A program made the translations under genes and the position numbers. A stretch of 64,000 nt of DNA from Asterias rubens. Taxonomy: Eukaryota. The notes below the pieces were generated by a model that saw only the letters and a program-made list of their open reading frames with translations, ran no database searches and was not told where the DNA came from. Of this stretch, positions 4,400 through 48,167 are shown one piece after another; position 1 is the stretch's first letter, and each line of letters begins with the position of its first letter. The DNA lies in contig NC_047079.1 of assembly GCF_902459465.1 (NCBI RefSeq), positions 8,618,001 through 8,682,000 of the forward strand, read 5' to 3'.

Positions 4400-5961
4400 G
4401 GAGATAAGTATAAGGATCAGTTAGTTCAACCAACAATGACGGGACAGCAACAAAACTGATAAACTCTGCACGACACAAATACCAATGGAGAGGAAAATGC
4501 TACGTATCTCAAACAAAGCCATTTTCATGATAGATTTGAATATTGTCTGGTACAATGACGTGCTTGATCACAAAGTAACACTGATGTTTGAATTCCTCAG
4601 ACTATCGAGACAGTTGCTACGTCACATGATTAGGGGCAAGCTTCTGCTTAGTTACGTAAGCGACGGTAAACACCATACAGGACTCTGAATGGTAGTGTAT
4701 GCATAATGGTACTAGGATCTGCTCATCTGGAGGCTTCTTTAAAAAAACTTGCCAGAACCATTGACATATCAACTGTCTCTATAGTCTGAGAAATTCAAAA
4801 TTTAGTGGCACATTGTAACTAAGCAAGTCATTGTACCAGACATTATTCAAATCTAAGACGTAAATGGCTTATTACAGACAGGATTAAATGCACAGAAATA
4901 CGTAAGAAAACTGGAGTAAGAGACATCATAAGGAAAATAAAACCAGCCAAATGGAGATGGGCTGGACACACTGCCCGAAGAAATGACAACAGATCGACAA
5001 CAAGAATAATGGATTGGCAAAGAAGGACAGGGAAAAGGAAAATAGGTAGACGGAGAAGAAGATGGAGAGATGACATTGGGGTATTATGCAGGAACAACGT
5101 GGACCAGAACAGCAAGAAATAGAAATGAATGGTATTTACATGAGGAGGGCTACATCCTACACTGGATAGGGAAAAGAGGTAGACAGAGAAGAAGATGGTG
5201 AGATGACATCAGGGTATTATGCAGGAACAACGTGGACCAGAACAGCAAGAAATAGAAACGAATGGTATTTACATGAGGAGGGCTACATCCTACACTGGAT
5301 AGGGAAAAGGGGTAGACAGAGAAGAAGATGGAGAGATGACATCAGGGTATTATCCAGGAACAACGTGGACCAAAGCTGCAAGAAATAGAAACGAATGGCG
5401 TCATGAGGAAGGCTACATCTTACACTGGAAAAGGAAAAGGGGTAGACAGAGAAGAAGATGGAGAGATAACATCAGGGTATTATGGAGAAACAACATGGAC
5501 CAGAACAGCAAGAAATATAAATGAATGGCGTCATGAGGAGGGCTACATCTTACACTGGATAGGGAAAAGGGGTAGACAGAGAAGAAGATGGAGAGATGAC
5601 ATCAGGGTATTATGCAGGAACAACGTGGACCAAAGCTGCAAGAAATATAAAGGAATGGCGTCATGAGGAAGGCTACATCTTAAACTGGAAAAGGAAAAGG
5701 GGTAGACAGAGAAGAAGATGGAGAGATAACATCAGGGTATATGCAGGAACAACGTGGACCAGAACTGCAAGAAATATAAATGAATGGCGTCATGAGAAAG
5801 GCTACATCTTATACTGGAAAAGGAAAAGGGGTAGACAGAGAAGAAGATGGAGAGATAACATCAGGGTATATGCAGGAACAACGTGGACCAGAACTGCAAG
5901 AAGTATAAATGAATGGCATCATGAGGAGGGATACTTCTTACACTGGATGATTACAGCCTAA
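4400..5961 (+). mobile_element. RTE-clade LINE 3' end (RT C-terminus) with tandemly amplified terminus
   Basis: 4870-5170 translates DRIKCTEIRKKTGVRDIIRKIKPAKWRWAGHTARRNDNR...GRRRRRWRDDI, typical of the RTE ORF C-terminus. An older degenerate piece (MERKMLRIS) lies at ~4480-4640. Confidence 0.8.
5030..5961 (+). repeat. Tandem array of 7 units of 129-133 bp
   Basis: gtagac(a/g)gagaagaagatgg recurs at 5046, 5179, 5312, 5442, 5572, 5702, 5831. Confidence 0.95.
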
Positions 5962-31726: not shown

Positions 31727-32303
31727 TTAAGTTCCATATCAAACTGTCAAAGGCGTAGGACGCGTTGAACCCATCCTAAGTTTGATGTTGATGGCTTTTG
31801 TAAAAAAAAGATCTATTGATTTCAGAGAGCTTTATCAATATTTATCAATAGGGTATTGATTATTGGTAATCTGTGTATTGACAATGGGTTTATGATTAGA
31901 AGGAGGCTGGCTGGCGCCAAATTCAAAGGGTATAATGATCGGGGGTGGGGGTTAATGACAGGGTTTGCCCTGTGACTAGCCAGCTGGACCAGTTAGCTTT
32001 TCATGGCACTAATCTGTCAGATGTTTCCACGGTCTATATTTCACTAGGAATGCTCTCCAACACTGAACTAGCCGGCTAGAGCATTTAGAGTTAGGAGAAG
32101 AGGGGGGAGGGTACTTTATGTGCAAGATGAAGGGGGGAGTCTTTCAGAGTAATGACAATGTTTTCCTTATATTGCGTGTGATATACTGAACAGAACCCCA
32201 AAACCAATTACTTAAATCATGTTTGTATTGAATGGCAATTTGAATTTGTCTTCCTCGGAATTTGTTTTCCCCGTCAGGTCTTTTCATCGATTATTAAACC
32301 ATC

Positions 32304-32920
32304 ATGCCAACCTCTTCAGAACCGAACGAATTTCTACAAGAGGTTGCCGTGGAAACCCCGGAATCATGTTCCTCACCAAGCCCACGGGACACCCTCAGCT
32401 CAGAGCTTCAAGCTGAGGAAGCCACGCCTATTAGAGTAGAGGACACACCCATCGAGGAGGAGGAGCCTTTGGTGATCACACCCTCGGAGTGTAGAGAAAA
32501 AGATTGTTCTTTCACAGTGGATTTAGATTGTGAACATGAGGAATTGTATGTTGCGGATGACAAACCAAGAAATGCTCGATTGGACACTGCCATATTGGGT
32601 GTTGAGCCCACTGGCACCCACCTACTTATTGATTCATCATACAGTGAGCCCAGTCTCACCCAGTCCAAATCAGCACCCTCATGTAGCCCACCCAGTAGAA
32701 CCCAAACAAACTGCTCTGATGCAATAGACACGCCCACTTTAACCCATTCAGCTGTGAGGCCTTACTTAATAGGCTCCTTCCCTAGTCATCACGCGGAACT
32801 TCCTCCCAATCCTAGGGATTTAACTTCAAGGGTAACGACCGTCACAGAATGGGTTTTGGGGCGCCAGTTTCTTCTGCTACCAGTCGTTTCAATGTTCTTA
32901 ACAGTACTCAGACCAATAAG
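32304..32920 (+). CDS. DISP3: DISP3 coding exon 1 (acidic, Ser/Pro-rich N-terminal extension)
   Basis: Acceptor ttttccccgtcag at 32277, ATG at 32304, 205 open codons. Donor AG|gtacaa at 32920 is phase 2, matching the phase-2 open start of exon 2 (...LRPIR|YLIPDS...). Confidence 0.65.
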
Positions 32921-35900
32921 GTACAAAGTTTGACCCCTGACCCCCTAAGAAGTTGTGCAGTTTTGTTTGTTAAACGCTTCATGTGTTTTTCATACCTTTG
33001 GTTTTTGGAGTGCATTGTTTTAATGTAAATGTATAATTATATACAAAAAAAACTTAACTTGTGAAGGTTTAATTTCAATGGAAGAAAACATCAAAGCTGA
33101 CTCTCTAGTGGTGGTTTTGCACTGTCTGATTTTATCAACTTTTGATATGATGAAAGGCAGCACGCTCAAAACTTGTCCAACTGTTACTTTGCGGTTTTAA
33201 TTGTGGTCTTTCTGTTTAGAAAGAATTTTGAAAAAAAAAAAAAAACAAGAACAGTAATTTCTTTCTTTATTGAAAAAAAAATGCTGAATCTCAAATCCAA
33301 ACAAACTTAAAACCATGGAGTAATCAAATTGTCCAGACTATTTCTCCCCAAACTGTCGTCATCTCTTATTTTATTAAGACTTTTTGTAAAGTACTCAGGA
33401 AAAAAAAAATTAAAAACATTGAACACTTACTTATATTCCTTCTTAAACAAAAAAAAATGCTGAATCTCAAATCCAACCAAACTCCAGACCATGAAGTTAT
33501 CAAATTGTCGGTTCTAATTCCTCCCCAAACTATCGTCATCTCATATTTTATTATCAAAGTACTGCCAGTAATATCAAATTTATCGGCGTAGTTTGCTGAG
33601 GTAGTTAAATTCATACGTGCCAAGCGAAGGACAATAAGTCCCTATTCGACAGCACTGAATGTAGATTAAATGTCACTCTACATACGTTATTGAATAAGCA
33701 CCAAATGAAATTGTATGAAATATTAGACTGCGCCTTAGTCTAAAGCCAGCGCTGCGGGCTAACAATGTGCTTATGTTTTGGGTAGTATTATCACTCCCTG
33801 ATTGTAAGTAGGTTTTCAAGATTTCCATACGTCATAAGGCGAACGCAAAACACGAACACTAGTGTTTTAGTGTTTGATTTTTTTTTTCTTTTTTTTTCAC
33901 AAAAGTTTACAGTCATCGAACATAAACAGTAATATTTGTGTGTGTTTTTTTTTCTTTCTCTTCTGTTTCCTTACTCAGCAAAGTTGTTGGTTCAAAGTTT
34001 TTACCATACAGTACGTGTATTGAGAGACCCTATTTTGTTTCCACTGCCTGCCCTGCTCGGCAAATTTCATTTATTATGAACGAAAAATAAAATTGTTTCT
34101 GTGACTGTTAATCTCTCTTGATTATCCGGGGTTTGTCAAGGCTGTTTCTGTGTTCATGTATGGTTACTATGACTACAGTATATCTACGCACAGTAAAGGA
34201 CAATTAAATTGCGAGTTTGATTAGTAAAATTTCTGGTACAATGACTTGCTTAGTCACAATGTATCGCCTACATGGAGACAGTTGCTATGTCAATTGGTTT
34301 GGGACAAGCTTTTGCATAGCAACCGCCAGATGAGCAAACCCTAGCATTGTGTCATACACATCCATTCAGAATGGTGTACATGTATGGGTGTTCACTGTCT
34401 CTTATGACACAGGGTATTACTCATGCGGGATACGAACCCACGACCTTTGCCAACCTAGAGCAGCGAAACCTTTACCAACTAGACCACCGAGGTTGCCCAG
34501 TAGCTAGAGCTAATAATTATAATCACAGTGGCTTCTTATAGCGCTCATATCCGTCACTCAGTGATGCTCAAGCTGCTTCAACATTCAGTATTTTCGAACC
34601 CCTTCTCTTTTTGATAAGTGAACTAGTTCTTTTACGTAACACAACACTCAGGACCAACCGCTTTACGTCACATCCGAAGGCAGTTTGGATTCACCAAGTG
34701 AGACTACTGGTCTCAAATACCACGTGTCCAGTCTCTGTTTAGTGAACAAAGTCTGAAGTGGGCAAATTGATAACCAGTTTTTACAGATTTGTCTTAGATT
34801 TTGAATAACATTTTGTTTCTCTCTGTTCCTTTACCAGATATTTGATTCCTGATTCTATCCGCGCAAAGCTGCTGAGTGGGGAGACTTGCCACGCCCCGTT
34901 CCACGCCCAGACTGGCACCCTACCCTACCAACCACCTACCGATACCACCCTAGCCCTAACCACCATGTCGGGTCAGTTGTGCTTCACCTCCCGTTACGGC
35001 CCCTTCAGCGAACGCTTGGATGACGAGGTCACATTCCAAACATCGGCCGAGAATCAAGGCAGTGATCTTCAGGGTGTGGACAACTTAGCTTTCGAATCGG
35101 ATCAACTGATTGGAGACCAGAATTTCAGTACCAGTGACACAACAAGGAATAGCGCCACCTTTGCTTTCCAGTCGCACGTCAATAAAGATCGCAGCGGCAG
35201 TTCCGAGGAGAGTTTTAGCAGTCAGGAATCTATTCCGGAGATAGTTCCTCTTGGCCAACCCTGGAGAGCTCTTGGTTGGTTCTTCAGTAGAACCATCGTC
35301 AGCATCATCATCTTATTCCTGATGACCGGGGCGTCGCTGGCCCTCGCTGGGGTCAGCGTCTTCGTTGTCGGCCCTACTCCATACTTTGACAAATCCCTCA
35401 ACGCTTTCCAGATCCCGAACCACGTTTCAACTCGTCGTCAGATGGCTTTCGACCAGGCCAAGAAAGATGACTTCAAAAACTTGCCCAAAAGAAGCGCCGA
35501 TAACCAAATCGGCGATGGTGACTATCTGAAATATTGGGATTCGAATGACGGTAATGACATATTCAACTCACTGCTACGCAAAACCAATTCTGAAATATCA
35601 GGAATCCCCCAAGCAAACAGTAATTCATATTATGCCAAACAAAAAACAGATTTATTTATTAACGATAATGAAGACCAGCCAAACAATGCCGCAAGACCCA
35701 AGAGAGGGTTGGATGAAGGCGAGACTTCTCACACTCGTCAGAGGAGATCTGCGCATCGATATCGCTCTATGAGATGGCGCATACAACTCGTCTACATTGC
35801 CGAGGGAGATGATAAAAACATCTTCACTAAGGAACGTCTGGAGACGATACACAACATTGAGATGTCTATCATGAACCATCCAAACTTTACTTTCTTCTGT

Positions 35901-38900
35901 TCCCGTAACCCACGATCCTTCGGTGACGCAGCCCTGGCACCATACAATCACTGTATCCCACCAAATTCATTGATGACATATTTCTACCCATCTGAGGTCG
36001 ATTCAAAGGTAAGTCAATCAATCAAGCGTAACATTTGTATGCAGGCATGCAACTCGTCCGCAGAACTGCGGTTGTTCCGCATTTAACAAAAGGAATGCTC
36101 TGTGGAAGTTAACACACAAAAGCATTACACAGACCAGACACAGAAACACGATCAATTGGAAAATTATTGTTTGTTTTTTTTCTACTAAAGAGGTGCATGC
36201 CTGTATATGGCGCTATATTTCAACAATCATTGCTCATGATGCCGTAAAGTAAGCATCTGAAATATTTGATTTGTAGGTGATTGACTGATGTTGTTAGGAA
36301 GATTGTTCCATATTCCGGGGGTAACAACAGAAAAGGCCCACTCACCCCAACTGTGTTTGCTTCTAGGAATGAATAATGCAGACTTGTCCGAACTGGAGTG
36401 CAAATTATGAGATGTTTTATAGAAAGTCAGTAGGTTGGTGTGGTATGCTTGACCGACTCTTTCTTGGTCTAATATTGTTTCTCCAAACATAGATTGTTTG
36501 GCTGTGGACAAGATTATTTAGTACGAGCGACGATTTGTTCACCAGAAAGAGGTTTTAACCTTACAATTTCCTTCACAGATCATCTACGATGGCGTAGGGA
36601 CGGAGCTGGCTGATATTAACGGAACTCTAGCTCACGCCATGACAGAGACTACCTTCTACTGGTACGTGGACACCAGCATGAACACTAAAAACAGACGCAG
36701 CAAGTTTCTACGCAGTGAGGTAAGCAAAGGGGGGCCCTTAGCTGAGTGATGTTTCACACCAGACTCAATGTCTGGTGGAGATCATTCTGATAAAGACACT
36801 TCCATGCTTTAATAGTAAGAAGCCTTTAAAGGGTTTGAATACTTTTTGTATGAAACAAACATAAAAAAGTCCACAGATTTACACTAAACTTACACCGTTT
36901 GAACATAATGATGGTAGAAAGCTTCCCTTAAAATGTTACTTGCTAAAGGTGCTGTATTTGGTTACAAATAATAAATTTAAAAAAAATGAAAATAGTTTTT
37001 GTCTCAGTGAGTCGGGAAAAATGGATTTATTGCTCACAATAAAATTGGTCTAGCAACAACCCTGTTCACAATATATTATGATCAATGCTTGTTTTGTTCT
37101 TTTGCCCAGGTGTGGTTTGGCGGACCAATTGGGGAAATTCCATTTATATGCTTTACAATATATTATGCTCAAAGCTTGTTTTGTTTTTTTGCCCAGGTGT
37201 GGTTTGGAGGACCAATTGGTGAAATTCCAAACACTCTTTCAAGAGATGAGGTCTCCCAGTTGTACAAGGATTTTGTAATCACATACATCGACCTTCTGAA
37301 CAATGCATCAACTGAGTAAGTGTTTACCCCTTTTTAAGATTCTCAGCTGGGCCAAATGTCTTAGATCTGGGCCTAGTTTCATGCCTCTGCTTAACGCTGA
37401 ACTTTAACCTACAGTCATCATTCTCTGCTTACTTTCAAATAGAAATTTGCATCGGGATGAAGAATATTATTTGGGGTTTTACCCATTATACACTGATGTG
37501 TGTTACCACTGTATACTCCCAGGCTCTGTGAAAAAAATCAAAGGCATGTTACTCGGGTGTGATTCGAACCCACGACCTTTGCCAATCTATAGCAGTGTCT
37601 GAAATACCAACTAGATCATTCGAGATTGCCCAATGGCTAGAGGCAGGAATTATTTCCCAGGTACTCAGTCAGTTTCCCTTGTTGTTTATCTCCTTTTTCT
37701 TCTCTTGTTTTGTACACAGTAAAGTACGTGTTCTCTACGGTGGAACTCAACTCTTTGACTACGAAGTGTCACAAACCATCTCCCATGACCTCAGCCTTGC
37801 AATACCTACAGGTACCATTAAGCAGGACTCAAATTTGGGGAAATCCAATTAAATTCAATTCAATTCAATATTGGTTTATTTTCATATAAAAATACAAGAC
37901 CAAATAAAAAGTCATAGACTAATGGCATTTGGTTAACAATAAAATAACATCAAAACAAGTTCCTAAAGCACATTTGTTTACAATAACATATCAATGCACT
38001 TTACATAAGAACCCTGGACAGTGGGCCAATACAATTTTTTTTATCTTTCTCGACTCCCTGGGAGTAAACAGCCCTGTACTACCGTGGCGCTCCAAAGGCT
38101 TTTAAGCACAATACAAGAATTGTGTTGGCCCAATGACCAGGGCACTATTACAAAGCGCATCAGTATGCATTAGTGTAAATTACACTATAACAAAACAGCT
38201 ATTATTTAGTAATACTACTATTATTAAAAACAAGAAGTCGCCGCAGTTATTCACATTCCCATATTTTTGTTTTCTAGGCGTGGCCATTTTCCTCTTGCTC
38301 TTCATCCTGACGTCCTTCTCCGTCTGGCTAACCATCTGGGGTTTTGCCAGCATCCTCCTCAGCTTCGCTTGGGCGTACTTCATTTATCACGTTGCCTTCG
38401 GGAAAGCCGCCCTGGGCCTGCTGAATCTGGTCTCAGCGTTTGTCATCATCGGCATCGGTAAGCCAAAGATAATTAATGATTGGTTTATTTCGGAAACAAA
38501 GGCTTCAAAGCCTTAAAGTCACTTGACACTATTGGTAACTACTCAAAATAATTGTTAGCATAAAACTCATTTGGTAACAAGCAATGGAGAGCTATTGATA
38601 GTATAAACCACTTTGAGAAATGACTCCCTCTGAAGAAACATATTTTTGAGAAAGAGGTAATTTCACACTCCAATATTAAAATACTTCAGACCTGAAGCAT
38701 TTTATTAGGCATCTGAAAACACACTTATGCAACAAGGGTGTTTTTCCTTCATTGTTTTCTTGCAACTCCGATGACCGATTGAGCCCAAATCTTCACAGGT
38801 TTGTTCATTTCTGCATGTTGAGATACAGCAAGTGAGAAGACTGGTCTTTCATAATTACCAAAGCTGTCCGTGCCTTTAAGGAGACTGATTTGTGCTTTAT

Positions 38901-41900
38901 TTCACATCATTAAGAAGAGTTGTTAGTTTCTTTTTTCATATATATTTTTTTTATCACCACTGTATGTTTGTCTTTGCCATGGTTGGCAGATACTGGGTGT
39001 AAAGATCTGTTTATTGTTAGTATGAATTTGTGTATTTGTGTTCCCATTTTAGTTGGTAAATTCTTAGTTCTTACTCTACTCCATCTTCTTTCTCCCTTTC
39101 ATACCTGCCTCCAGGTGTAGACGACGTGTTTGTCTTTGTCAACACTTTCCTCCAGGCAGACCACTACAAGGACCCCATCCAGCGGATGGCACACACCATT
39201 AAAACGGCAGGCATAGCAACCTTCTTTACTTCATTCACGACTGCCGGAGCCTTCGCTGCAAACATCGCCTCTCAGGTGAGTCTCTTTGGGTAGCTTAAAG
39301 GGACACGTTGCCTTGGATGGGGGCGAGTGAGTCTGTGAAATGCATTTGGAATTGCTTGTTATGAAATGCAACTGTTAGAAAGATGTTTTAAAAGTAGAAT
39401 ATAATGATCTTAAACATTGCAAGGTTTTCCTTATCTGTCATGAACTAACATGACGCGCAAATTTGTGGAGTCAATTTTTTACTCCACTAAATGAACGACC
39501 ATGTTAATTCGCAAAGGTGGCTTTACGTCCCATCTGAAACGAAGCAATGGTCAAGCGTCTTGCTTAAGGACACAAGTGTCACGACTGGGACTCAAGAACC
39601 CACACTCTGCTGATCCGAAACACGAGGGCCCAGTGTCATGACTCTGCTAAACAGAGCCATGACATTGGGCTCACAGCTCCAGTCTGGTGCTCTGCTAAAC
39701 AGAGCCATGACACTGGGCTCACAGCTAGAGTCTGGTGCTCTGCTAAACAGAGCCATGACATTGGGCTCACAGCTAGAGTCTGGTGCTCTGCTAAACAGAT
39801 CCATGACATTGGGCTCACAGCTCGAGTCTGGTTCTCTTAACTGCTCAGCACGCCAGACGTTATTAATGGTCCTCTCTCTCTTCATGACAGATACCAGCCA
39901 TCAATGACTTTGGCCTGTTCATGTGTCTAATCGTCAGCTTCTGTTGGCTTCTAGTCGTCCTTATCATGCCATGTGCTCTTACTCTCTGGCATCGTTGCTT
40001 CCATTGTGAAGCCTTTATGTAAGTACAAAGACTTGTTGATGTTTTGGGGTTTTTGTTTTTGTTTTTATTATTATAAATGATTTTGGGTTGAACAAAGAAA
40101 AATTTACTAGAGCGGGATTTGAACCAACGACCTCCGGTTTAACGTGCCGGCGCTCTACCAACTGAGCTATCTAGCCCTATGTTGGCGGTCTCCCTATTTT
40201 ATTATTGATACATCCAACAACATAATGTTTACAAAAGTTTCTGTACAGTTGTCGGTATTTGTATTTCAGATTTGGTCGGTGTGTACGAGGTAAAAACGAC
40301 CCTGCAGCCGCAATGGCAAACCTGTCCCGCGTTCTAGCACGCCATGAGAGGCAAGCCACCCAGCAGCTAGCTTCGGAAGAGGGTGGGGATGAACAGAGCA
40401 GCCAGGAGGGAGGTAGGGAGGAGGGAAGCGGTCTGAGGGCGACTCGAGGAGATGACAACGATATACCCCTGCTGGACCTAGAGGAATTAAACAACACTCA
40501 GAGTAAGAGAGTAGAGGCAACACTGTTAATGATAATAATAATATTAATAATAGATTTTTATGTAGCGCTTCTGACATTATTACCCATATTCACTGGGCAA
40601 TATTCATTCCTTAAACCATCTTAGCTCCTGGGGAGTACTCAGCCGGTTCTGAGAGTTACCGCACTCCAAGCTTTAATCGTGTACATAAACCGTGTCTGCC
40701 CTCACAGGTACCACTTTTACCCCTGGGTGGAAAAAAGTTGGTGATTAATTAAGTGTCTTGCCCAAGGACACAAGTATCATGACCAGGATTCAAACCCACA
40801 TCCCGATGACTGAACCACCAGAACTTGAGTCTGATGCTCTTATCCGCTACACCACAACACCCCACTGTTTTGAAGAGCAGAACTCAATCCACACAAATGA
40901 TTCAACTACCATATCATACCGCATCTCTTTGGAGCTTTGCCAATTATCATTAGGCTGCTTCAGGACGGTTTGTTCTGCGCACACACACTTCCAACTTGGT
41001 TTGTAAGCTGTAACGTTCCTTTAAATAAACTAAATTTTCCATTTGTTTTGACAGACCTTTTGATTGAAGACGATGAACCTCTTATTCTAACCAATGACGA
41101 TGAGGTTCTCTCGTCTTTTCCTTCCGCGTCTACTCCTACTAAGCAGACTCGTGGTATTACCAAGACACTCCAAAGTATCCTCTATAACTGTGTTGCTACC
41201 CCTGTCATTAAAGGACGATGGATTGTGGTCCGTAAGTATTAGAACCTTTTCAATTCAATACAATTCAATTCAATAACTACAGTACTACAGAGGGAGCCAT
41301 TTCTCACAGTGTTTTCCACAGCTCTTCGTTGCTCGTTACCAAGTCAGTTTTTATGCTAACAATTATTTGGAGTTATTACCAATAGTGACCAGTGCCTTTA
41401 AACAGTGTTACATCATCTGCATGTATCTTGCTTTTTTCATGTAATTTCGCCTTTTCATCTTGAGTGTAATTTGGTATGATCTTTGTAGTTGGTTATCTGG
41501 TCATCTTTGGCGTCTCCCTGGGCCTGGTTGTCCAAATCAACCCTGCCAATCGACCTCCCGCCCTCTACAACCCGGACACAAACCTCCAACAGCTCTTGGA
41601 CTTGGCATACAACTTCAGCGGTTCGGATATCGCCTGTCGGTCCTGCTCAGGATTCTCGTCTAACGGGGCGCCCAGTCCCCATGGCAACGGCCCGGTGACA
41701 TTGCCAGTGGTGATTCCAGTCCCGACAAGACGCCCTCCGTCATCGGCACCCCAACACGGTGGTGTCATCACTACGACAACAAAGGTGATGATAACAGCGG
41801 ATTCCCAAACGTGTTTTTGTCAGTCCACTGATGTTCACCTTCTCTGATTGACAAGTCCACTATAAGTCCACTAAAATAAAACTCCACTAGTGTTCACCTT

Positions 41901-44900
41901 CTCTGATTGACAAGTCCACTATAAGTCCACTAAAATAAAACTCCACTAGTGTTCACCTTCTCTAATTGACAAGTCCACTATAAGTCCACTAAAATAAAAC
42001 TCCACTAGTGTTCACCTTCTCTGATTGACAAGTCCACTATAAGTCCACTAAAATAAAACTCCACTAGTGTTTACCTTCTCTGATTGACAAGTCCACTATA
42101 AGTCCACTAAAATAAAACTCCACTAGTGTTCACCTTCTCTGATTGACAAGTCCACTATAAGTCCACTAAAATAAAACTCCACTAGTGTTCACCTTCTCTG
42201 ATTGACAAGTCCACTATAAGTCCACTAAAATAAAACTCCACTAATGTTCACCTTCTCTGATTGACAAGTCCACTATAAGTCCACCAAAATAAAACTCCAC
42301 TAGTGTTTACCATCTCTGATTGACAAGTCCACTATAAGTCCACTAAAATAAAACTCCACTAGTGTTCACCCTCTCTGATTGACAAGTCCACTATAAGTCC
42401 ACTAAAATAAAACTCCACTAGTGTTTACCATCTCTGATTGACAAGTCCTTTAAATCCACTGGTTAACACTTTTAAGTAAGGTTAAAACCTAATTTTCACC
42501 TTTTCTGATCCACAAGTCCTCTGAATAAAACTCAACTAATTTTCACTTTCTCTGATCAAAAAGTCCACTAAGTCAGAATAAAAGTAATTTTTACCTTTTT
42601 GGATTCACTAGTTCTCTGCATAAAACTCAACACACTTTTACATTTCCACTTACTGATATTCACCTTCTGACTAAAAACAATTTTCCATGATATGTGCAAA
42701 CCCAATATTTTTAGTGCCATTAACCTATACTAATTCAAGCGTAATCCACTGGTTTTCACCTTAGGTGACCCCACGTCCCCCAGCTGACACCCTCTCTCCT
42801 GACATCTCAAATCCACCTGGTGTTTCTTTTGGATTGACCACAGAGCTTGGACAAGTCATTACTGCTGCACTTACAGTAGGCATCCGTAAGTTGAAGATCA
42901 ATCGTCACCAAAGTCAATACACCTTTATCATGCTGTCACCATCTTGGTCATGATCCCTGTTTCCAATAACAGTAATGAATGCTAAAATTCGTTGCGCAAA
43001 CATGGCACCAGACTATTATTTCGTCCTGCCTCAGTTTGGTTACAATGAGTTGGAATGGGGTACAATCAAGACGGCCACACCGTGATAGAGGTCTATACTA
43101 TTGAGTCACTGTGGGTTAAGTGGTTAAACTGCAAGACTTGCAATCACAATTTTGTGGGTTAGAGTCTCACCAAGCTAACACAGCTGATTTCACTATGGCT
43201 AGAATAAATATTGTCTAGTTACTGAATCTCAATTTCTTGATTTTTGCAATTCATAATCATGGGTGACCTTACTCTATGGTTAAACCAATGTTTGTATGAG
43301 GGAGATTGGCTGTTGCCAGCTTGGTGTTTATATCCCCTTTTATGTGGGAGTTTACCAGGTTCCCTTGATCATCTCAACAAACAAACTAAATAACCAATTG
43401 TATACTGTCTTGCCTTATATTCTACTACCGCGGAGTAGGCTTCTCAAAGTTCTGAAAAAACTTTTCTGCTTGTTAACTAATACCTGGACAAAAAGTAGAA
43501 AATAGGCCTGGACTACAACTCACTACCGCGGAGTAAGTTCTTAATTTGGTCTCAACATTTTGACTACCTGGTAATCCAAATAAATCTTGATACATACCTC
43601 AAATCTTCTGTTGATATTCTTGTTAAAGGGCTAACATGTGCCGAAGTTGGCCCAACCTGTGAGTTCGGTAGTACTTGTGATGAGGGTGACGCTACATCGG
43701 AACCAGTCTGTCGATGTATCTTCCACTGTACCACTGACTCTTATCCTGTGTGTGGCAGCAACGGACAGACCTACATTAACCTCTGTGATCTACGGGCGAG
43801 TGGATGTATCAACAAACAGATTATTCATCAAGCTCACTCGGGAGCCTGCGACAGTACGTTTCTTCCAATTTCCTGTTCGTTTGTTTTTTGTTTTTTGTTT
43901 TTTGAGGGGAGGGGGGTTGCTTATCAGAGCATGTGATATAAGGGACTTGTAACACACTTTTACTGATAGTTTCCCAGTTTCCGTTGGAAAAGTCAAACAC
44001 TTTCGATCTCAGAAATTTACTCAACTATGTGACAATATGAAGCAATATTGTTACTTTATTGATTGAAAATATTCACAAGATAACTTGGCTAACAAAAACC
44101 AATGCTGTATTAACCCTAGGATAAATTCTTTACCTAAAACTTTCCTGATAATCTTTTCAAGTTATGTTTTAAAATGGCTTTGATTTTAGATTCGCCTTCA
44201 CCGGACAGTGGCCATCCAGACACACACGGGCAAACCACCAGACCCAGCAGCCAAGGTGGGGCTAGCTACCCCCAGGGTGGGGATACCTCCCAAGGGGGTG
44301 GGGAGGAACATGCAAACTCACCACACTCCGGTTTCAACCCTTGTGCGGGGGGTTCTTGTGGGAAACCTGCGGTCCGGCCGGCACTGGACAACCTCGCGTT
44401 GGTCTACGTGGTGTTTGGGATCGACCACATTGATATGAGTGAGGTATCAACAGAGCATGTTGTAGCTGAGGAGGAGGTGAGTGTGGAACTGTGGGGAATC
44501 GAACCTGAAACCCACGGTTTTCTTGTGGTGATTTGTAGCGTGTCCTGGCCATCGGATATAGATTGTCAAACTCAAATACTGATGGCCTAGTGTTGGTTCA
44601 TATTTTGGTGGTGAACACCATTGGAACTGCTGGGAATCGAACCTGAATCCCACAGTTTTCTTGTGGTGTTTTGTAGCATATCGTGGCCATGGGGTCTAGA
44701 TAGTCAAACTGAAATACTGATGGCTGATTGTTGGTTTATCTTGGTGGTGGTGAACACCTGTAGAACCTTGAGCCTTGAACTGTGGGGAATCGAACCTCAA
44801 ACCCAAGGTTTTCTTGTGGTGTTATGTAGCGTGTCTTAATCGGGAGCTCCATCTATCTATTTAAAATGTACATTGTATCATTATATTTCAGGGGCAAGTC

Positions 44901-47380
44901 GTTTACGATAACGACTTCAACATCCTGAGTGAAGACACCCTAAGAGCGTTGTGTAAGATCTGCAAGAATGTAGCCGCTAGAACGGAGCTGGTTGAAGAGG
45001 GTGGAGCGCAGTGCTTCCCTGATGGTAAACAACAATAACAACAACAACCAACAAACAAATTTGTGTGGTTTACTTTTTTAGAAATCTTGTTATGCTCTTT
45101 GAATGTTTCCCACTCCTGTTTTGGTGCTATTTTAATTTGTACAGCGCCTTGGGCTTAGGTCATGGATGTAAGGCGCTTTATAATTACAACTATTTTATAT
45201 TATACTATTATTAATTTTTTTTTTTCCGATCTCCTCACCAGCTTTCTCCAGTTACGTCAACGCAATCAAGATCAAGTATGAAGAGTGTAGAGATCTGCCG
45301 GTACCCAACCTTCTGGCTGGTACCCGCTCCAAGAGCCTTGTATACAAGAGTGGCAGCAGGGTTGTCTGGTTTGCAATGGCTTTCCAATCGGTACGTTGAA
45401 AAGTTAAAACGATCGTATAAACTAAGGTAGTCGTCCCAGCCAATTTGCTTATACCTTCCGCCCATGTAGTAGTTAAATAGCAGGACAGTTCTATTCAGAA
45501 CTGAGAAGTCTCCCAAAAAATCTGATAAATCTACTCCGCGGTAGTAGAATAAAGAAAGACAGTTCTCCAAAGAACAAACACTACCTGGCACAGAGTAAAT
45601 ACACACTTGGTAATAAGTGCAAAAAGATAATTTATCATTAAATATTTAAAAAAAAAATTAAACAAATGATCTACCAGAAGACTGTTCATATAATGTTAAC
45701 ATCTTAAAATTGTTAATATTATTTTTTCCTCTTGTACTCTTTTAGAAAACCTTTATGGGTCAGTCGTCCTTTGAGTCCTACAAGGATTATAATAAATGGG
45801 AGGAAGTGATGAAGGATGAGGTTGATGGTTTGACGGAGGAGGAGAAGGTCGGCCTCAAGACGATGTTCCAGACCAGCTCCTACTGGAAGCAGATCTTCAT
45901 GGAGATTGTTGGTACGTTGGATATTTTATAATAATAAACAAAATGCAAGGTATTTTGATACCCACTCTTATTTGTAATTCGTGTTTACAAAAAAATGAAA
46001 CTATAAAAAAACTAGTTAATGGCCTAACGTTTTGACCCTAGCAGACTCTTTCTCGAAGGCTTGCATTTATACCCTGTGTCTTTTTGTTTGGTAAGTTGTT
46101 TGCAACAGCACCCTAAACGTCAAGATCCTCAGCATCTGACATACATGAACAGATTATAAAATATAAATATAGATGTAATATAGATAACAAGTAGAGCTAA
46201 ATGCAATGCAACAGTTAGAGATAAAAGGTTAAAGACTTGCAAAAGGAAAAAAGTAGTTAATGGCCTGACGTTTCGACCCTAGCAGAGTCTTTCTCGAAGG
46301 CTAAAATAAGACTTTAATAATTAATACCATGGACTTGTCCATGTCCCTCACATAGGTGTGACCAGTGCAATATACGGTGTGGCCTTCTCACTGCTGGTAT
46401 GCGTGGTAGCCGTTGTTATCTTCACAGCTCATATTGGCATTCTACTCATTGCTTTCTTAACCATTGGAGGTAAGTTCCAGCTTAGCTTAAGTGTTTTCAA
46501 TTTTATGTACAGGTAATTTGTTGATGAAAAGAGCCCTACCTGCTCATTTTGTAATTTAGCTTTCTCTTCTGACAACATTTTGTATTATTCATTTTGAACT
46601 ACTGTGATTTTTGTATCATTGGTGGAAGTGTCGTGGCCGAGCGGTTAAGAGCACCCAATTCAAACTCTGGTGTTTCTGATCAGCAGAGTGTGGGTTCGAA
46701 TCCCCAGCCATGACACTTGTGTCCTTAAGCAAGACACATAACCATTGCTTCGTCCTTCGGATGGGACGTAAAGCCGTTGGTCCCATGTGTTGTGTAAACG
46801 CATGTAAAAGAACCCAGTGCACTTATCGAAAAGAGAAGGGGTTCGCCCCTGTGTTCCTGGCTGGACTGGCAGCATATTGCGCCACAGCACCTTGTAAACC
46901 ATTACATGGTGCTTAAGGATTAGGTCTTATATCTCAAAATTCGCCCCACTCCTTGCAGTAATAATACCTGGCGCTTTGTATCCTTTGGCAAAAGGCGAGT
47001 TATAAATACGGTTAATATTATTATTATTATTATTATCATTATTGATTATTGTATGTTATGCATAAATTGGGATACACCAAGTGAGAATACTGGTCTTTGA
47101 CAATTTCCAAAGGTGTGCAGTGTCTTTAATTGATGATGATGTTCGATTCTTCCGCAGGTGTAATCTTAGTTGTCATCAGCATGTTTTATCTTCTTGGATG
47201 GGAGATGGGTGCTGTAGAAGCCGTCTCTCTCTCTATCCTAGTCGGGTCCTCGGTAGATTACTGTATTCATCTCATCGAAGGATACTTAGTGGCAGGAGAC
47301 AGGGTACCAGACAGCTCCAAAAAGGTAGAGTAGTAATAAGTCAACCATTTAGAGACCATTCAATCCAGACATTGTTAATG

Positions 47381-47411
<31 letters not shown>

Positions 47412-48167
47412 GTTCTTGTAAAAGTGTCTGGAAAAATAATATTAAACTTAAATGTGATTTGAGGCATTGTATGGCAAGGTATCACTATGTGTATCTACTT
47501 GCCAGGTAGATTGTCCTTTTGAGAACCTGTCTTACTTTATATTCTACTACTGCACTATACAAATCTTAAATTATATTATAATAATTATTGGTACCGATCA
47601 CAGGAGTAATATGCCTGTGATTTTTTCACAGCACTCGGGAAAGTACTGAGTATATAGTACAAACAGACATTGGTGAAACCAAAATGAATAATATTCTGTA
47701 GTCCAAATGCATATTTAACATCTATTCGATCACAAGCCTTTGATTATTATCACCATTTCACTCTTATTAATTCTGATTTCTGTTTTGACTTGAAACCCCA
47801 GACAGCAGCGGAGATGCGGAATTGGCGAATCCGTCACTCGGTCAGCACCATCGGCGTGTCAATCCTGAGCAGTGCCATCACAACCATCATCGCCTCAATT
47901 CCTCTCTGTTTCACTACCATCCAGATCTTCGCCAAGTTCGGCAAGATCGTCGCCATGAACACGTTCGTCTCAATCTTCTACACACTGACGGCGTGCACTG
48001 CGTTCCTGAGCATCGCGGGACCAGCTAGGTATCAATGGAACCTCAAGTGGTTTGTGTTCAGCGCGTTGGTGCTCTGCGCGCTCATCGGAGCTGTCGTCGC
48101 TGCATTGTTTGTGCTCCACACGTCGGGGGTGTCTATTCCAGGACCCTCTGGGAGTCCTCTCTTCTAA
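32304..48167 (+). CDS. DISP3: Dispatched homolog 3 (PTCHD2)-like RND/SSD multipass membrane protein; 20 coding exons, ~1680 aa
   Basis: Exons join in frame at GT-AG sites (5043 nt including stop). Motifs match recalled vertebrate DISP3: NIFTKERLETIHNIE, VLYGGTQLFDYEV, GIGVDDVFVF (SSD GxxxDD), PDTNLQQLLDL, WKQIFMEIVGV, GWEMGAVEAVSLSILVGSSVDYCIHL, FAKFGKIVAMNT. Exon 1 is less certain than exons 2-20. Confidence 0.93.
33273..33550. repeat. Imperfect direct duplication (~100 bp, period 176)
   Basis: aaaatgctgaatctcaaatccaa...tcaaattgtc...ccccaaact(g/a)tcgtcatctc at 33281 and 33457. Confidence 0.8.
34415..34515 (-). mobile_element. tRNA-derived SINE head (third family); second copy at ~37470-37650
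   Basis: Minus strand A box tggtctagttgg and B box ggttcg(t/a)atcc; cgaacccacgacctttgccaa shared between copies. Confidence 0.7.
34838..36008 (+). CDS. DISP3: DISP3 coding exon 2 (TM1 and start of luminal loop 1)
   Basis: Acceptor tctctgttcctttaccag, donor aag|gtaagt. Contains TM1 IVSIIILFLMTGASLALAGVSVFVV, FDKSLNAFQIPNH, WRIQLVYIAEGD, CIPPNSLMTYFYPS. Alternative in-frame start accaccATG at 34965. Confidence 0.93.
36190..36511 (-). mobile_element. L2-clade LINE 3' fragment in DISP3 intron
   Basis: Minus ORF ...LHSSSDKSALFIPRSKHSWGEWAFSVVTPGIWNNLP..., the L2 RT C-terminal RSS...VPR...GxRAFS...WNxLP pattern. Confidence 0.75.
36579..36719 (+). CDS. DISP3: DISP3 coding exon 3
   Basis: cacag|ATC...GAG|gtaagc; IIYDGVGTELADING...FYWYVD...SKFLRSE; phase 0-0. 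Confidence 0.93.
37197..37315 (+). CDS. DISP3: DISP3 coding exon 4
   Basis: gcccag|GTG...GA|gtaagt; VWFGGPIGEIPN...YKDFVITYIDLL; phase 0-2. A duplicated acceptor lies 87 nt upstream. Confidence 0.9.
37720..37811 (+). CDS. DISP3: DISP3 coding exon 5
   Basis: acacag|T...G|gtacca; KVRVLYGGTQLFDYEVSQTISHDLSLA; phase 2-1. Confidence 0.92.
38278..38457 (+). CDS. DISP3: DISP3 coding exon 6 (SSD TM2-TM4)
   Basis: ttctag|GC...G|gtaagc; hydrophobic VAIFLLLFILTSFSVWLTIWGF...LLNLVSAFVIIGIG; phase 1-1. Confidence 0.95.
38517..38875. mobile_element. Kolobok-type MITE in DISP3 intron 6
   Basis: ttaa-agtcacttgacactattggtaa ... gtccgtgcct-ttaa. Confidence 0.85.
39115..39275 (+). CDS. DISP3: DISP3 coding exon 7 (SSD GxxxDD, TM5)
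   Basis: ctccag|GT...CAG|gtgagt; VDDVFVFVNTF...TAGIATFFTSFTTAGAFAANIASQ; phase 1-0. Confidence 0.95.
39642..39833. repeat. Minisatellite, 4 x 48 bp, grown from a SINE head, just upstream of the exon 8 acceptor
   Basis: ctctgctaaacagagccatgacattgggctcacagctagagtctggtg at 39642, 39690, 39738, 39786. Confidence 0.92.
39891..40018 (+). CDS. DISP3: DISP3 coding exon 8 (TM6)
   Basis: tgacag|ATA...AT|gtaagt; IPAINDFGLFMCLIVSFCWLLVVLIMPCALTLW; phase 0-2. Confidence 0.95.
40105..40175 (-). pseudogene. tRNA-like sequence (tRNA-derived SINE head or tRNA pseudogene), GTT at the anticodon position
   Basis: Minus strand GCTAGATAGCTCAGTTGGTAGAGCGCCGGCACGTTAAACCGGAGGTCGTTGGTTCAAATCCCGCTCTAGTA; perfect D stem, but mismatches in acceptor (7-66), anticodon (31-39) and T stems. 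Confidence 0.6.
40270..40502 (+). CDS. DISP3: DISP3 coding exon 9 (cytoplasmic loop)
   Basis: tttcag|A...A|gtaaga; acidic loop with DIPLLDLEE; phase 2-1 fits both neighbours. Confidence 0.88.
40540..40865 (-). mobile_element. tRNA-derived SINE, second subfamily; related copies at 37950-38120 and 58165-58395
   Basis: Minus-strand tRNA-like head (ggattcaaaccc on plus), gtgtccttgggcaagacac block, and ccacccaggggtaaaagtggtacc core resembling recalled conserved metazoan SINE central domains; TTA tail. Confidence 0.65.
41055..41231 (+). CDS. DISP3: DISP3 coding exon 10
   Basis: tgacag|AC...C|gtaagt; ...LQSILYNCVATPVIKGRWIVV; phase 1-1. Confidence 0.9.
41489..41784 (+). CDS. DISP3: DISP3 coding exon 11 (TM7, start of luminal loop 2)
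   Basis: ttgtag|TT; GYLVIFGVSLGLVVQINPANRPPALYNPDTNLQQLLDLAYNFSGSDIACRSCSG. The 3' donor aag|gtgatg is weaker but gives the phase 0 needed by exon 12. Confidence 0.85.
41831..42448. repeat. Minisatellite, 10.5 x 59 bp in DISP3 intron 11
   Basis: gtgttcaccttctctgattgacaagtccactataagtccactaaaataaaactccacta; period 59. Confidence 0.97.
42765..42885 (+). CDS. DISP3: DISP3 coding exon 12 (Pro/Thr-rich linker)
   Basis: ttttcaccttag|GTG...C|gtaagt; open frame VTPRPPADTLSPDISNPPG...; phase 0-1 bridges exons 11 and 13. Confidence 0.7.
43629..43853 (+). CDS. DISP3: DISP3 coding exon 13: follistatin (FOLN+Kazal) module
   Basis: ttcttgttaaag|GG...A|gtacgt; 225 nt, phase 1-1; TCAEVGPTCEFGSTCDEGDATSEPVCRCIFHCTTDSYPVCGSNGQTYINLCDLRASGCINKQIIHQAHSGAC has 10 Cys and the Kazal PVCGSNGxTYxNxC signature. 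Confidence 0.85.
44190..44476 (+). CDS. DISP3: DISP3 coding exon 14
   Basis: ttttag|AT...GAG|gtgagt; Gly/Ser/Pro linker then CAGGSCGKPAVRPALDNLALVYVVFGI; phase 1-0. Confidence 0.9.
44486..44835. repeat. Imperfect tandem of ~140-150 bp units, each with a minus-strand Pol III B-box
   Basis: gaactg.tggg(g)aatcgaacct.aa.ccca..gttttcttgtggtg at 44486, 44624, 44777. Confidence 0.8.
44892..45024 (+). CDS. DISP3: DISP3 coding exon 15
   Basis: tttcag|GGG...G|gtaaac; GQVVYDNDFN...LCKICKNVAARTELVEEGGAQCFP; phase 0-1. Confidence 0.93.
45242..45390 (+). CDS. DISP3: DISP3 coding exon 16
   Basis: tcaccag|CT...TCG|gtacgt; FSSYVNAIKIKYEECRDLPVPNLL...RVVWFAMAFQS; phase 1-0. Confidence 0.92.
45746..45911 (+). 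CDS. DISP3: DISP3 coding exon 17
   Basis: ttttag|AAA...G|gtacgt; KTFMGQSSFESYKDYNKWE...FQTSSYWKQIFMEIV; phase 0-1. Confidence 0.94.
46022..46060 (-). ncRNA. Minimal type I hammerhead ribozyme, second copy (G12 to A, own core probably inactive)
   Basis: Minus strand GCCT-TCGAGAA-A-GAGTC-tgcta-GGGTC-AAAA-C-GTT-AGGC; direct repeat of 46263-46301, offset 241 bp. Confidence 0.45.
46263..46301 (-). ncRNA. Minimal type I hammerhead ribozyme (variant U3-A8 core), Penelope/retrozyme-like repeat copy with intact core
   Basis: Minus strand GCCT-TCGAGAA-A-GACTC-tgcta-GGGTC-GAAA-C-GTC-AGGC: stem I GCCT/AGGC, stem II GACTC/GGGTC, GAAA, palindromic ACGT stem III, GUC cleavage triplet. Confidence 0.6.
46356..46469 (+). 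CDS. DISP3: DISP3 coding exon 18 (TM8-TM9)
   Basis: cacatag|GT...G|gtaagt; VTSAIYGVAFSLLVCVVAVVIFTAHIGILLIAFLTIG; phase 1-1. Confidence 0.94.
46624..47040 (+). mobile_element. Near full-length tRNA-derived SINE with (ATT)n tail
   Basis: A box gtggccgagcggtt, B box ggttcgaatcc, central gacacttgtgtccttaagcaagacac, body ...gcgccacagcaccttgtaaaccattacatggtgct, tail tattattattatt. Partial copies at 8310-8570 (+), 34515-34690 (-), 39530-39640 (-), 49130-49245 (-). Confidence 0.85.
47158..47324 (+). CDS. DISP3: DISP3 coding exon 19 (TM10)
   Basis: ccgcag|GT...AAG|gtagag; GWEMGAVEAVSLSILVGSSVDYCIHLIEGY; phase 1-0. Confidence 0.95.
47802..48167 (+). CDS. DISP3: DISP3 coding exon 20 (TM11-TM12 and C-terminus)
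   Basis: ccccag|ACA; IGVSILSSAITT...FAKFGKIVAMNTFVSIFYTL...GVSIPGPSGSPLF*. Confidence 0.95.
   Translation, partial: TAAEMRNWRIRHSVSTIGVSILSSAITTIIASIPLCFTTIQIFAKFGKIVAMNTFVSIFYTLTACTAFLSIAGPARYQWNLKWFVFSALVLCALIGAVVAALFVLHTSGVSIPGPSGSPLF

What the first reader, a model, noticed from the sequence alone, without database searches (positions are those of the whole stretch)
43629..43853. Follistatin/Kazal module shuffled into the second luminal loop of a Dispatched-3 protein
Seen: a 225-nt exon with clean splice sites, phase 1 on both sides, in frame with exons 12 and 14. It encodes a complete 10-Cys follistatin domain in the agrin/tomoregulin pattern (C-C-C-CxC...C...PVCGSNGxTYxNxC...C...C). 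Pro/Thr/Ser-rich linkers (end of exon 11, exon 12, start of exon 14) flank it between TM7 and the conserved CGKPAVRP block. Known: symmetric phase 1-1 exons are the classic unit of extracellular module shuffling, and follistatin domains bind TGF-beta-family ligands, heparan sulfate or proteases. From memory, vertebrate DISP3 has only a low-complexity linker here. Inference: a sterol-sensing RND protein with a ligand-binding or protease-inhibitor module on a mucin-like stalk, possibly an undescribed lineage-specific architecture.
Basis: partly seen in the sequence, partly recalled or inferred. Interest (0 to 1): 0.78.

Follow-up and report, generated by a model that had tools for sequence, protein, structure and literature searches.

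The report
Follistatin-domain exon in starfish Dispatched-3
The exon is real and encodes a follistatin/Kazal module in the second outer loop of the starfish Dispatched-3 gene, but it is already in the public gene model and is an old feature shared by echinoderms, acorn worms and amphioxus, not a new lineage-specific invention.

Summary
Observation confirmed. Window 43629-43853 (+) is a 225-nt AG/GT exon, phase 1 on both sides, encoding a 10-Cys follistatin (FS) domain (Pfam Kazal_2 E 1e-11; best solved relatives are the agrin and FSTL1 FS domains). The window is the Asterias rubens DISP3-like gene. RefSeq XP_033641919.1 maps exactly and already contains this exon with these borders.

The module is not lineage-specific. 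The same 10-Cys FS domain sits at the same place in DISP3 orthologues of all five echinoderm classes and of the acorn worm Ptychodera. Amphioxus has a modified, weakly scoring copy. In all four other genomes checked it is one symmetric phase 1-1 exon.

It is absent from corals, molluscs, a brachiopod, nemerteans and an annelid, which have only a Pro/Thr linker. The likeliest history is a gain on the deuterostome stem and a replacement in vertebrates.

S. purpuratus isoform X2 skips exactly this exon. AlphaFold gives a confident FS fold between two disordered linkers.

Function is inferred: a tethered binding module, probably not a classical protease inhibitor because P1 is polar or acidic and variable. 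No paper describing it was found. Interest is modest.

The parts
34965..48164 (+). Coding region of the Asterias rubens DISP3-like gene (RefSeq isoform X2, 1432 aa). Isoform X1 adds a first coding exon at 32892-32920, spliced to 34838.
   Evidence: Exact peptide-to-genome mapping of P0110 and P0159 with GT-AG junctions. One search gave 20 exact-match blocks; one junction (37142/37221) was left unresolved, so the exon count is about 19-20. Pfam Sterol-sensing and Patched SSD on P0110.
41489..41784 (+). Exon holding TM7, the conserved NLQxLLDL...CxxCSG motif and the start of the Pro/Thr-rich linker 1.
   Evidence: Junctions 41231^41489 and 41784^42765. The linker part has pLDDT below 50.
42765..42885 (+). 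Linker exon (121 nt, phase 0 to 1) encoding Pro/Thr/Ser-rich sequence.
   Evidence: Predicted disordered. 95.8% identical to the A. amurensis exon.
43629..43853 (+). FS exon: 225 nt, phase 1-1, one complete 10-Cys follistatin-like domain (EGF-like hairpin plus Kazal subdomain). It is P0110 residues 898-973.
   Evidence: The probable RNA run X1 holds 1.00 of its sampled words. dN/dS is 0.18 against A. amurensis.
44190..44476 (+). Exon with the Gly/Ser/Pro-rich linker 2, then the conserved NPCxxxxCGKPAVRP...VYVVFGI block that opens the ECD2 core.
   Evidence: The block matches Pfam DUF7023 positions 155-183 (28.2 bits against a cut-off of 27). It is invariant or nearly invariant across metazoan DISP3.

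Best explanation
The window is the DISP3 (PTCHD2)-like gene of the starfish Asterias rubens. Exon 43629-43853 is a genuine, probably expressed coding exon under purifying selection. It places one complete follistatin-like (FS) domain in the linker between TM7 and the core of the second extracellular/luminal domain (ECD2). The FS domain is held between two disordered Pro/Thr/Ser/Gly-rich tethers. The module is ancient: a single symmetric phase 1-1 exon at the same site in echinoderms, an acorn worm and amphioxus. It most likely entered a phase-1 intron of the linker on the deuterostome stem and was later replaced in vertebrates by the unrelated DUF7023 segment. Those points are shown. Inferred: the FS domain acts as a flexibly tethered, disulfide-stabilised binding module that brings a secreted or luminal protein partner to the transporter. 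It is probably not a classical serine-protease inhibitor or a heparin binder. At least in sea urchins it appears to be optional through exon skipping.
For: Exon and domain. Exact identity with RefSeq XP_033641919.1 at the same borders. Expression: run X1 (kind guessed as RNA) holds 1.00 of the exon's sampled words. The same run holds only 0.39 of 43400-44600, and 0.386 is expected if it holds exons 13 and 14 and no intron. Constraint: the exon is 95.6% identical to A. amurensis against about 87% for intron 12, with dN/dS 0.18. All 10 Cys are invariant in 12 species. Distribution: Kazal_2 hits in DISP3-like proteins of Patiria, Acanthaster, Asterias, Amphiura, Lytechinus, Diadema, S. purpuratus X1, Apostichopus, Anneissia and Ptychodera, with weak sub-threshold hits in Antedon isoform X2 (19.9 bits) and Branchiostoma (22.4 bits) against the 22.8-bit cut-off; Antedon nevertheless keeps the full 10-Cys pattern. 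There are none in vertebrates, molluscs, brachiopod, nemerteans, annelid or corals. Phase 1-1 single exon in S. purpuratus, Anneissia, Ptychodera and B. belcheri. The gene tree follows the species tree, and FS needs only two changes on it. S. purpuratus X2 lacks exactly the 77-aa FS exon. Structure: FS pLDDT 70-94, linkers below 50, ECD2 core around 90; Foldseek finds the FSTL1 FS domain (6jza) and Dispatched (6tbu, 7rpk). Against an inhibitor role: P1 is T/S/N/D/V/Q/E and differs even between the two Asterias species; the Asterias domain has net charge -5.
Against: The binding-module function is inference from family knowledge, and no partner is known. The subcellular site of invertebrate DISP3 is unknown. 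Reactive-loop variability is also typical of true Kazal inhibitors, so P1 variability does not exclude inhibition of some protease. The timing of the gain rests on few non-deuterostome taxa. Tunicates, Saccoglossus, xenacoelomorphs and ecdysozoans were not sampled. Alignment of intron positions inside low-complexity linkers is not strict positional homology.
Confidence: 0.8

Rival explanations
1. The module is a working Kazal-type serine-protease inhibitor tethered to the transporter. It might protect the ECD or control a convertase-type cleavage like the one that activates DISP1.
For: The six-Cys Kazal subdomain is intact, with the canonical 7-8 residue loop between Kazal Cys2 and Cys3. It shows structural and sequence similarity to OMTKY3, infestin and SPINK inhibitors. 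The reactive loop is hypervariable, as in true inhibitors. DISP1 is activated by proteolytic cleavage (title and abstract of PMC5811216, listed).
Against: P1 is Thr/Ser/Asn/Asp/Val/Gln/Glu, never Lys/Arg/Leu/Phe/Tyr/Met, and is not conserved. From established work on ovomucoid P1 variants, such residues give weak binding to the standard serine proteases. FS domains of follistatin, FSTL and SPARC are not known as inhibitors (my own knowledge). The closest full-length matches are FS domains, not free Kazal inhibitors.
Confidence: 0.1
2. The module specifically traps TGF-beta-family ligands (activin/BMP/GDF type), as follistatin and FSTL FS domains do. This would couple a sterol-sensing RND protein to morphogen signalling.
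For: The best single-domain solved relative is the FSTL1 FS domain (E 1.2e-9; Foldseek top hit 6jza, 38% identity). The profile also matches follistatin and FSTL3 FS domains over their full length.
Against: Ligand capture by follistatin uses several FS domains plus the N-terminal domain, and here there is only one FS (my own knowledge). Surface residues outside the Cys frame are poorly conserved among orthologues, with only T4, P27 and T49 nearly invariant. Agrin-type FS repeats score just as well.
Confidence: 0.08
3. This is a recent, lineage-specific exon shuffle in starfish.
For: A symmetric 1-1 exon encoding one complete module is the classic signature of exon shuffling.
Against: The same module occurs at the same site and in the same intron phases in five echinoderm classes, a hemichordate and amphioxus. 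The tree needs one gain on the deuterostome stem.
Confidence: 0.01
4. The exon is an annotation artefact or a non-functional pseudo-exon.
Against: The frame is open with 10 Cys. dN/dS is 0.18 and exon identity exceeds intron identity. The module is conserved across phyla. A probable RNA run holds the exon but not the introns. A Logan contig of S. purpuratus encodes a 1458-aa protein (P0153) that includes FS.
Confidence: 0.01

Closest known systems
Vertebrate DISP3 / PTCHD2 (sterol-sensing-domain RND protein; PMC5278513)
   Same: It is the orthologous gene: the tree follows the species tree. It has the same SSD and the same TM7-ECD2 organisation, and the NPCxxxCGKPAVRP...VVFGI block is conserved.
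   Different: Where the starfish has linker-FS-linker, vertebrates have a conserved segment of about 150 aa with predicted beta-strands (N-terminal part of DUF7023). That segment has no Kazal hit and no detectable similarity to the FS profile (hhalign probability 0.3%).
FS domains of FSTL1, follistatin/FSTL3 and agrin
   Same: The 10-Cys pattern, the EGF-like hairpin plus Kazal subdomain, and the PVCGS(D/N)GxTYxNxC motif. The profile aligns over the full length, and the AF2 model superposes on 6jza.
   Different: Here a single FS is embedded in a loop of a polytopic RND membrane protein, rather than in a secreted or matrix multi-FS protein. The Asterias N-terminal hairpin is acidic, without the basic heparin-binding cluster of follistatin FS1 (the follistatin feature is from my own knowledge).
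Kazal-like domain in extracellular loop 5 of OATP/SLCO transporters (PMC10507018)
   Same: A Cys-rich Kazal-type module sits in a large extracellular loop of a polytopic transporter-type protein, and its function is unknown in both cases.
   Different: The host fold is unrelated (MFS against RND/SSD). The OATP domain is Kazal only and packs on the transporter. Here a full FS domain hangs between linkers that AF2 predicts as disordered. [quoted passage not shown] DISP3-like proteins of invertebrate deuterostomes appear to be a second case, although transport by DISP3 itself has not been shown.
DISP1 / Drosophila Dispatched
   Same: Same RND/SSD family. The predicted ECD2 core plus TM7/TM8 match the solved structures 6tbu, 7rpk and 6xe6.
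   Different: It is a paralogous clade with no FS module. DISP1 releases lipidated Hedgehog, whereas the substrate of DISP3 is unknown.

Membership tests
Follistatin-like (FS) domain | Ten Cys in the FS spacing (4 in the EGF-like hairpin, 6 in the Kazal part) | tested here: met
   for the window. All 10 Cys are invariant in 12 orthologues.
Follistatin-like (FS) domain | Kazal subdomain recognised by a curated profile above its threshold | tested here: met
   Kazal_2 scores 45.2 bits against 22.8, and Kazal_1 scores 28.2 against 21.
Follistatin-like (FS) domain | N-terminal FOLN/EGF-like subdomain | tested here: inconclusive
   No Pfam FOLN-type family appeared among the hits listed at E up to 1. 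However, alignments to FSTL1, follistatin, FSTL3 and agrin FS domains span profile positions 2-77, which include the hairpin.
Follistatin-like (FS) domain | FS fold | tested here: met
   AF2 pLDDT is 70-94 over residues 901-973. The Foldseek top hit is 6jza (FSTL1 FS): 73 columns, TM 0.61 normalised by target, 38% identity.
Canonical Kazal serine-protease inhibitors | Reactive-site loop with a P1 residue suited to a target protease | tested here: inconclusive
   Loop length is canonical (7-8 residues), but P1 is T/S/N/D/V/Q/E and not conserved. This argues against an inhibitor role but does not exclude it.
Canonical Kazal serine-protease inhibitors | Measured protease inhibition | not testable with these tools
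   Needs recombinant protein and enzyme assays.
DISP3/PTCHD2 orthologue group (Dispatched branch of RND/SSD proteins) | Sterol-sensing domain | tested here: met
   Sterol-sensing 51.5 bits and Patched SSD 47.9 bits on P0110.
DISP3/PTCHD2 orthologue group (Dispatched branch of RND/SSD proteins) | Orthology to vertebrate DISP3 | tested here: met
   The tree of 36 proteins recovers cnidarians, lophotrochozoans and deuterostomes (97% SH-aLRT), with vertebrate DISP3 inside the deuterostomes. No DISP1/2 outgroup was included, so the DISP3 label rests on RefSeq names and profile ranking.
DISP3/PTCHD2 orthologue group (Dispatched branch of RND/SSD proteins) | Dispatched-type ECD2 fold between TM7 and TM8 | tested here: met
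   Foldseek hits 6tbu_A, 7rpk_A and 6xe6 at E 6e-4 to 3e-3 over about 200 columns.
DISP3/PTCHD2 orthologue group (Dispatched branch of RND/SSD proteins) | Twelve-TM RND topology with both large loops on the outer/luminal side | not tested
   Topology is inferred from solved DISP1 structures. A 10-Cys disulfide domain fits an oxidising compartment.
OATP/SLCO transporters with a Kazal loop | OATP (MFS) transporter core | tested here: not met
   No OATP family is among the Pfam hits of P0110. This is an analogy only.

The most novel reading that the evidence does not exclude
The TM7-ECD2 linker of DISP3 is a recurrent site of module insertion. It holds an FS domain in invertebrate deuterostomes, an unrelated DUF7023 segment in vertebrates and an Ig I-set domain in one bivalve lineage. 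On this reading, the FS version is a ligand-capturing arm that ties a sterol-sensing RND protein to a secreted signalling protein such as a TGF-beta-family ligand. That would give the first experimental handle on what DISP3 binds. The descriptive part (three different inserts at one site) is well supported here. The probability given is for the functional part.
Probability: 0.12. Interest if true: 0.65.

Novelty: new variant of a known kind. Interest (0 to 1): 0.3.

Why it matters
DISP3/PTCHD2 is a poorly understood sterol-sensing protein with no known ligand or substrate. An FS domain on a flexible tether is conserved across three invertebrate deuterostome phyla and appears to be optionally spliced in a sea urchin. 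This suggests that the ancestral deuterostome protein met a protein partner outside the membrane, and that vertebrates exchanged that module for another. It also appears to run against a statement in the OATP structural literature that Kazal-type domains occur in no transporters other than OATPs, although transport by DISP3 itself has not been shown. Sea urchin and starfish embryos are tractable, so exon-specific knock-down is feasible. The value is limited. The exon and the Pfam hit are already in public annotation, both building blocks are well known, and the function remains inference.

Tried and rejected
I then worked beside those places.

Disclosure: a local pairwise blastn inside my own script compared intron 13 (43854-44189, which contains those places) with the fetched A. 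amurensis locus. That was a lapse on my part, and the intron-13 figure is not used anywhere in this report.

2. AF2 of the vertebrate DUF7023 segment gave mean pLDDT 46. That is too poor for a fold search, so its fold stays unassigned.

3. Homology between DUF7023 and FS was rejected: hhalign probability 0.3%.

4. Literature searches ('DISP3 + Kazal', 'dispatched homolog 3 + follistatin', PTCHD2/DISP3 evolution) found nothing on the module.

5. The scan's earlier notes hold nothing on this feature.

6. The look-up of sequencing runs was busy twice before answering.

7. A second FS copy in the window was looked for and none was found.

8. The coral Montipora locus was not on record, so Porites was used instead.
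Full report
**What is at 43629-43853**

The + strand reads ...ttgttaaAG|GG CTA ACA TGT ... GCC TGC GAC A|GTacgt. Only the frame starting at 43631 is open. It gives 74 residues with ten cysteines:

LTC AEVGPTC EFGSTC DEGDATSEPVC RC IFHC TTDSYPVC GSNGQTYINLC DLRASGC INKQIIHQAHSGAC D

The two leading bases and the single trailing base make the exon phase 1 on both sides. Pfam scores it as Kazal_2 (45.2 bits, cut-off 22.8, E 9.8e-12) and Kazal_1.

Against solved structures, the best matches are the FS repeats of agrin, the FS domain of FSTL1 (E 1.2e-9) and the follistatin FS domains. These alignments start in the N-terminal EGF-like hairpin, not only in the Kazal part.

**Which gene it belongs to**

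A phmmer search with the large exon 34965-36008 against 1.8 billion representative proteins found DISP3-like proteins. The best full-length hit, Patiria miniata 'protein dispatched homolog 3-like' (P0001), aligns collinearly to the window from 34965 to 48164. The FS exon falls on its residues 905-990, where Pfam finds Kazal.

A multiple alignment then showed that the window's loop is letter-for-letter the Asterias rubens protein P0110 (XP_033641919.1, isoform X2). Exact peptide-to-genome mapping gives 20 exact-match blocks with GT-AG junctions, one junction being left unresolved.

Isoform X1 (1484 aa) adds a first coding exon at 32892-32920. I did not test that extension.

P0110 carries Sterol-sensing, Patched-SSD and Kazal_2 hits. 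The last 30 positions of Pfam DUF7023 fall on the CGKPAVRP block.

**Expression and constraint**

The indirect evidence is as follows.

- Run X1 (organism A, kind guessed as RNA) holds 1.00 of the sampled words of the exon alone.
- The same run holds only 0.39 of 43400-44600.
- The fraction expected if a run holds exons 13 and 14 and none of the introns is 0.386. It would be 0.17 or 0.22 for one exon alone.
- Against the congener A. amurensis, the exon is 95.6% identical while intron 12 is about 87% identical.
- The exon has 6 synonymous and 4 non-synonymous differences, giving dN/dS 0.18.

**Distribution**

Kazal_2 is found at the same position in DISP3-like proteins of these groups:

- asteroids: Asterias rubens, A. 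amurensis, Patiria, Acanthaster
- an ophiuroid: Amphiura
- echinoids: Lytechinus, Diadema, S. purpuratus X1
- a holothurian: Apostichopus
- a crinoid: Anneissia
- the hemichordate Ptychodera

Two further taxa score just below the 22.8-bit threshold. The crinoid Antedon scores 19.9 bits on isoform X2 but keeps all ten Cys. Branchiostoma scores 22.4 bits; its copy has an extra Cys and a longer loop.

All ten Cys are invariant across twelve species, while most other positions vary. A profile of these domains matches follistatin, FSTL3, FSTL1 and agrin FS domains over positions 2-77.

No Kazal hit, and only 4-8 Cys in the loop, were found in molluscs, Lingula, two nemerteans, Owenia or two corals. 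These have only a Pro/Thr-rich linker.

All vertebrates returned (sharks to mammals and teleosts) carry Pfam DUF7023 instead. Its first ~150 positions are a well-conserved, Cys-containing segment with predicted beta-strands, located exactly where the invertebrate deuterostomes have linker-FS-linker. It shows no profile similarity to the FS domain.

**Gene structure and history**

In S. purpuratus (L004 20042-20272), Anneissia (L005 14576-14797), Ptychodera (L001 12794-13021) and B. belcheri (L003 16398-16613), the FS domain is likewise one exon flanked by phase-1 introns.

Lingula and Lottia have a single phase-1 intron in the corresponding low-complexity linker, and Porites has phase-1 introns there too. 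This is what insertion of a 1-1 exon into a phase-1 intron predicts. Alignment inside such linkers is loose, however.

A maximum-likelihood tree of 36 DISP3 proteins, with the FS columns dropped by the gap filter, recovers corals, then lophotrochozoans, then deuterostomes (97% SH-aLRT). Within the deuterostomes are amphioxus, vertebrates and Ambulacraria. FS presence needs two changes on this tree, most simply a gain on the deuterostome stem and a loss or replacement in vertebrates.

**Splicing variation**

S. purpuratus isoform X2 differs from X1 by the exact absence of the 77-aa FS exon. A Logan contig of that species encodes a 1458-aa protein (P0153) that includes it. Crinoid isoforms vary the Pro/Thr linker upstream of FS by 40-85 aa. 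Both annotated A. rubens isoforms include FS.

**Structure**

AlphaFold2 was run on P0110 residues 752-1262 with a 19-sequence alignment.

| Region of P0110 | Residues | pLDDT |
|---|---|---|
| Linker 1 | 804-896 | below 50 |
| FS domain | 901-973 | 70-94 |
| Linker 2 | 974-1020 | below 50 |
| ECD2 core | after 1020 | about 90 |

Foldseek against the PDB returns the FSTL1 FS domain first (6jza) and Drosophila, mouse and human Dispatched next. The picture of a folded FS bead between two flexible tethers at the entrance of ECD2 is therefore supported as a prediction. The linkers are 52% and 62% P+T+S+G. 'Mucin-like' O-glycosylation is plausible but untested.

**Likely function**

Shown: a disulfide-rich FS module in a loop that, by homology with solved Dispatched structures, faces the extracellular or luminal side.

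Inferred: it acts as a binding arm.

- Against a classical Kazal inhibitor: the residue at P1 (second after Kazal Cys2) is T, S, N, D, V, Q, Q, Q, E, T, T, S across species. It differs even between the two Asterias species and is never a residue favoured by the common serine proteases (plus established ovomucoid P1 work from my own knowledge).
- Against follistatin-FS1-type heparin binding: the Asterias domain has net charge -5 and an acidic hairpin.

Which partner it binds is unknown. A TGF-beta-family ligand is one candidate with low prior.

**Comparison with what is known, and novelty**

The host is an orthologue of vertebrate DISP3/PTCHD2, and the insert is a standard FS domain. The nearest functional analogy is the Kazal-like domain in extracellular loop 5 of OATP transporters. 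[quoted passage not shown] DISP3-like proteins of invertebrate deuterostomes appear to be a second case.

I found no paper mentioning the module. However, the exon is in RefSeq and the Pfam hit is precomputed in public protein collections.

I rate it a new variant of a known kind, of modest interest.

After, no letters of 43869-43917 were sent to any database, run, paper or findings search. One local script aligned the whole of intron 13 to the fetched A. amurensis locus. I report this as a lapse and do not use that figure.

Noticed in passing
L002 (Logan SRR26950828 contig), protein P0116 residues 773-855: A DISP3-like protein, encoded on a Logan contig and sister to the scallop Mizuhopecten in the tree, carries an Ig I-set domain (E 6e-16). 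The domain lies in the same TM7-ECD2 linker where deuterostomes have FS. Other molluscs lack it. This looks like an independent module insertion at the same site.
   Followed up: partly
L004 20042-20272 (S. purpuratus): RefSeq isoform X2 (XP_030843063.1) skips exactly the 77-aa FS exon present in X1, so the FS module looks like a cassette exon in the sea urchin.
   Followed up: partly
L003 16398-16613 and 18432-18647 (B. belcheri, XP_019642881.1): This model contains the FS exon and its neighbouring exons twice, with identical lengths and splice-site contexts. Other Branchiostoma models (1426-1428 aa) have one copy. This is either an assembly duplication or a real tandem duplication.
   Followed up: no
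Vertebrate DISP3, e.g. P0201 residues 819-1016: The N-terminal ~150 positions of Pfam DUF7023 form a conserved vertebrate-only insert with predicted beta-strands at the FS site. AF2 with 17 sequences gave pLDDT 46, so the fold is unassigned.
   Followed up: partly
L005 and proteins P0164-P0167 (crinoids): Annotated crinoid isoforms differ by 40-85 aa cassettes in the Pro/Thr-rich linker just upstream of FS, suggesting a tether of adjustable length.
   Followed up: no
window 32298-32930: The ORF holding the RefSeq X1 start (32892) is open for about 196 further codons upstream to an ATG. It was not verified.
   Followed up: no
window 4823-5958: A tandem array of about 130-nt units whose translations repeat a ...KRGRQRRRWRDDIRV... 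motif. From my own knowledge this resembles the C-terminal end of LINE ORF2 proteins.
   Followed up: no
window 44450-44840 (intron 14): Three copies of a short repeat, translated as ...LWGIEPETHGFLVV.CSVSW.... It looks like an interspersed repeat sitting directly after the exon 14 donor.
   Followed up: no
I did not examine it.
   Followed up: no
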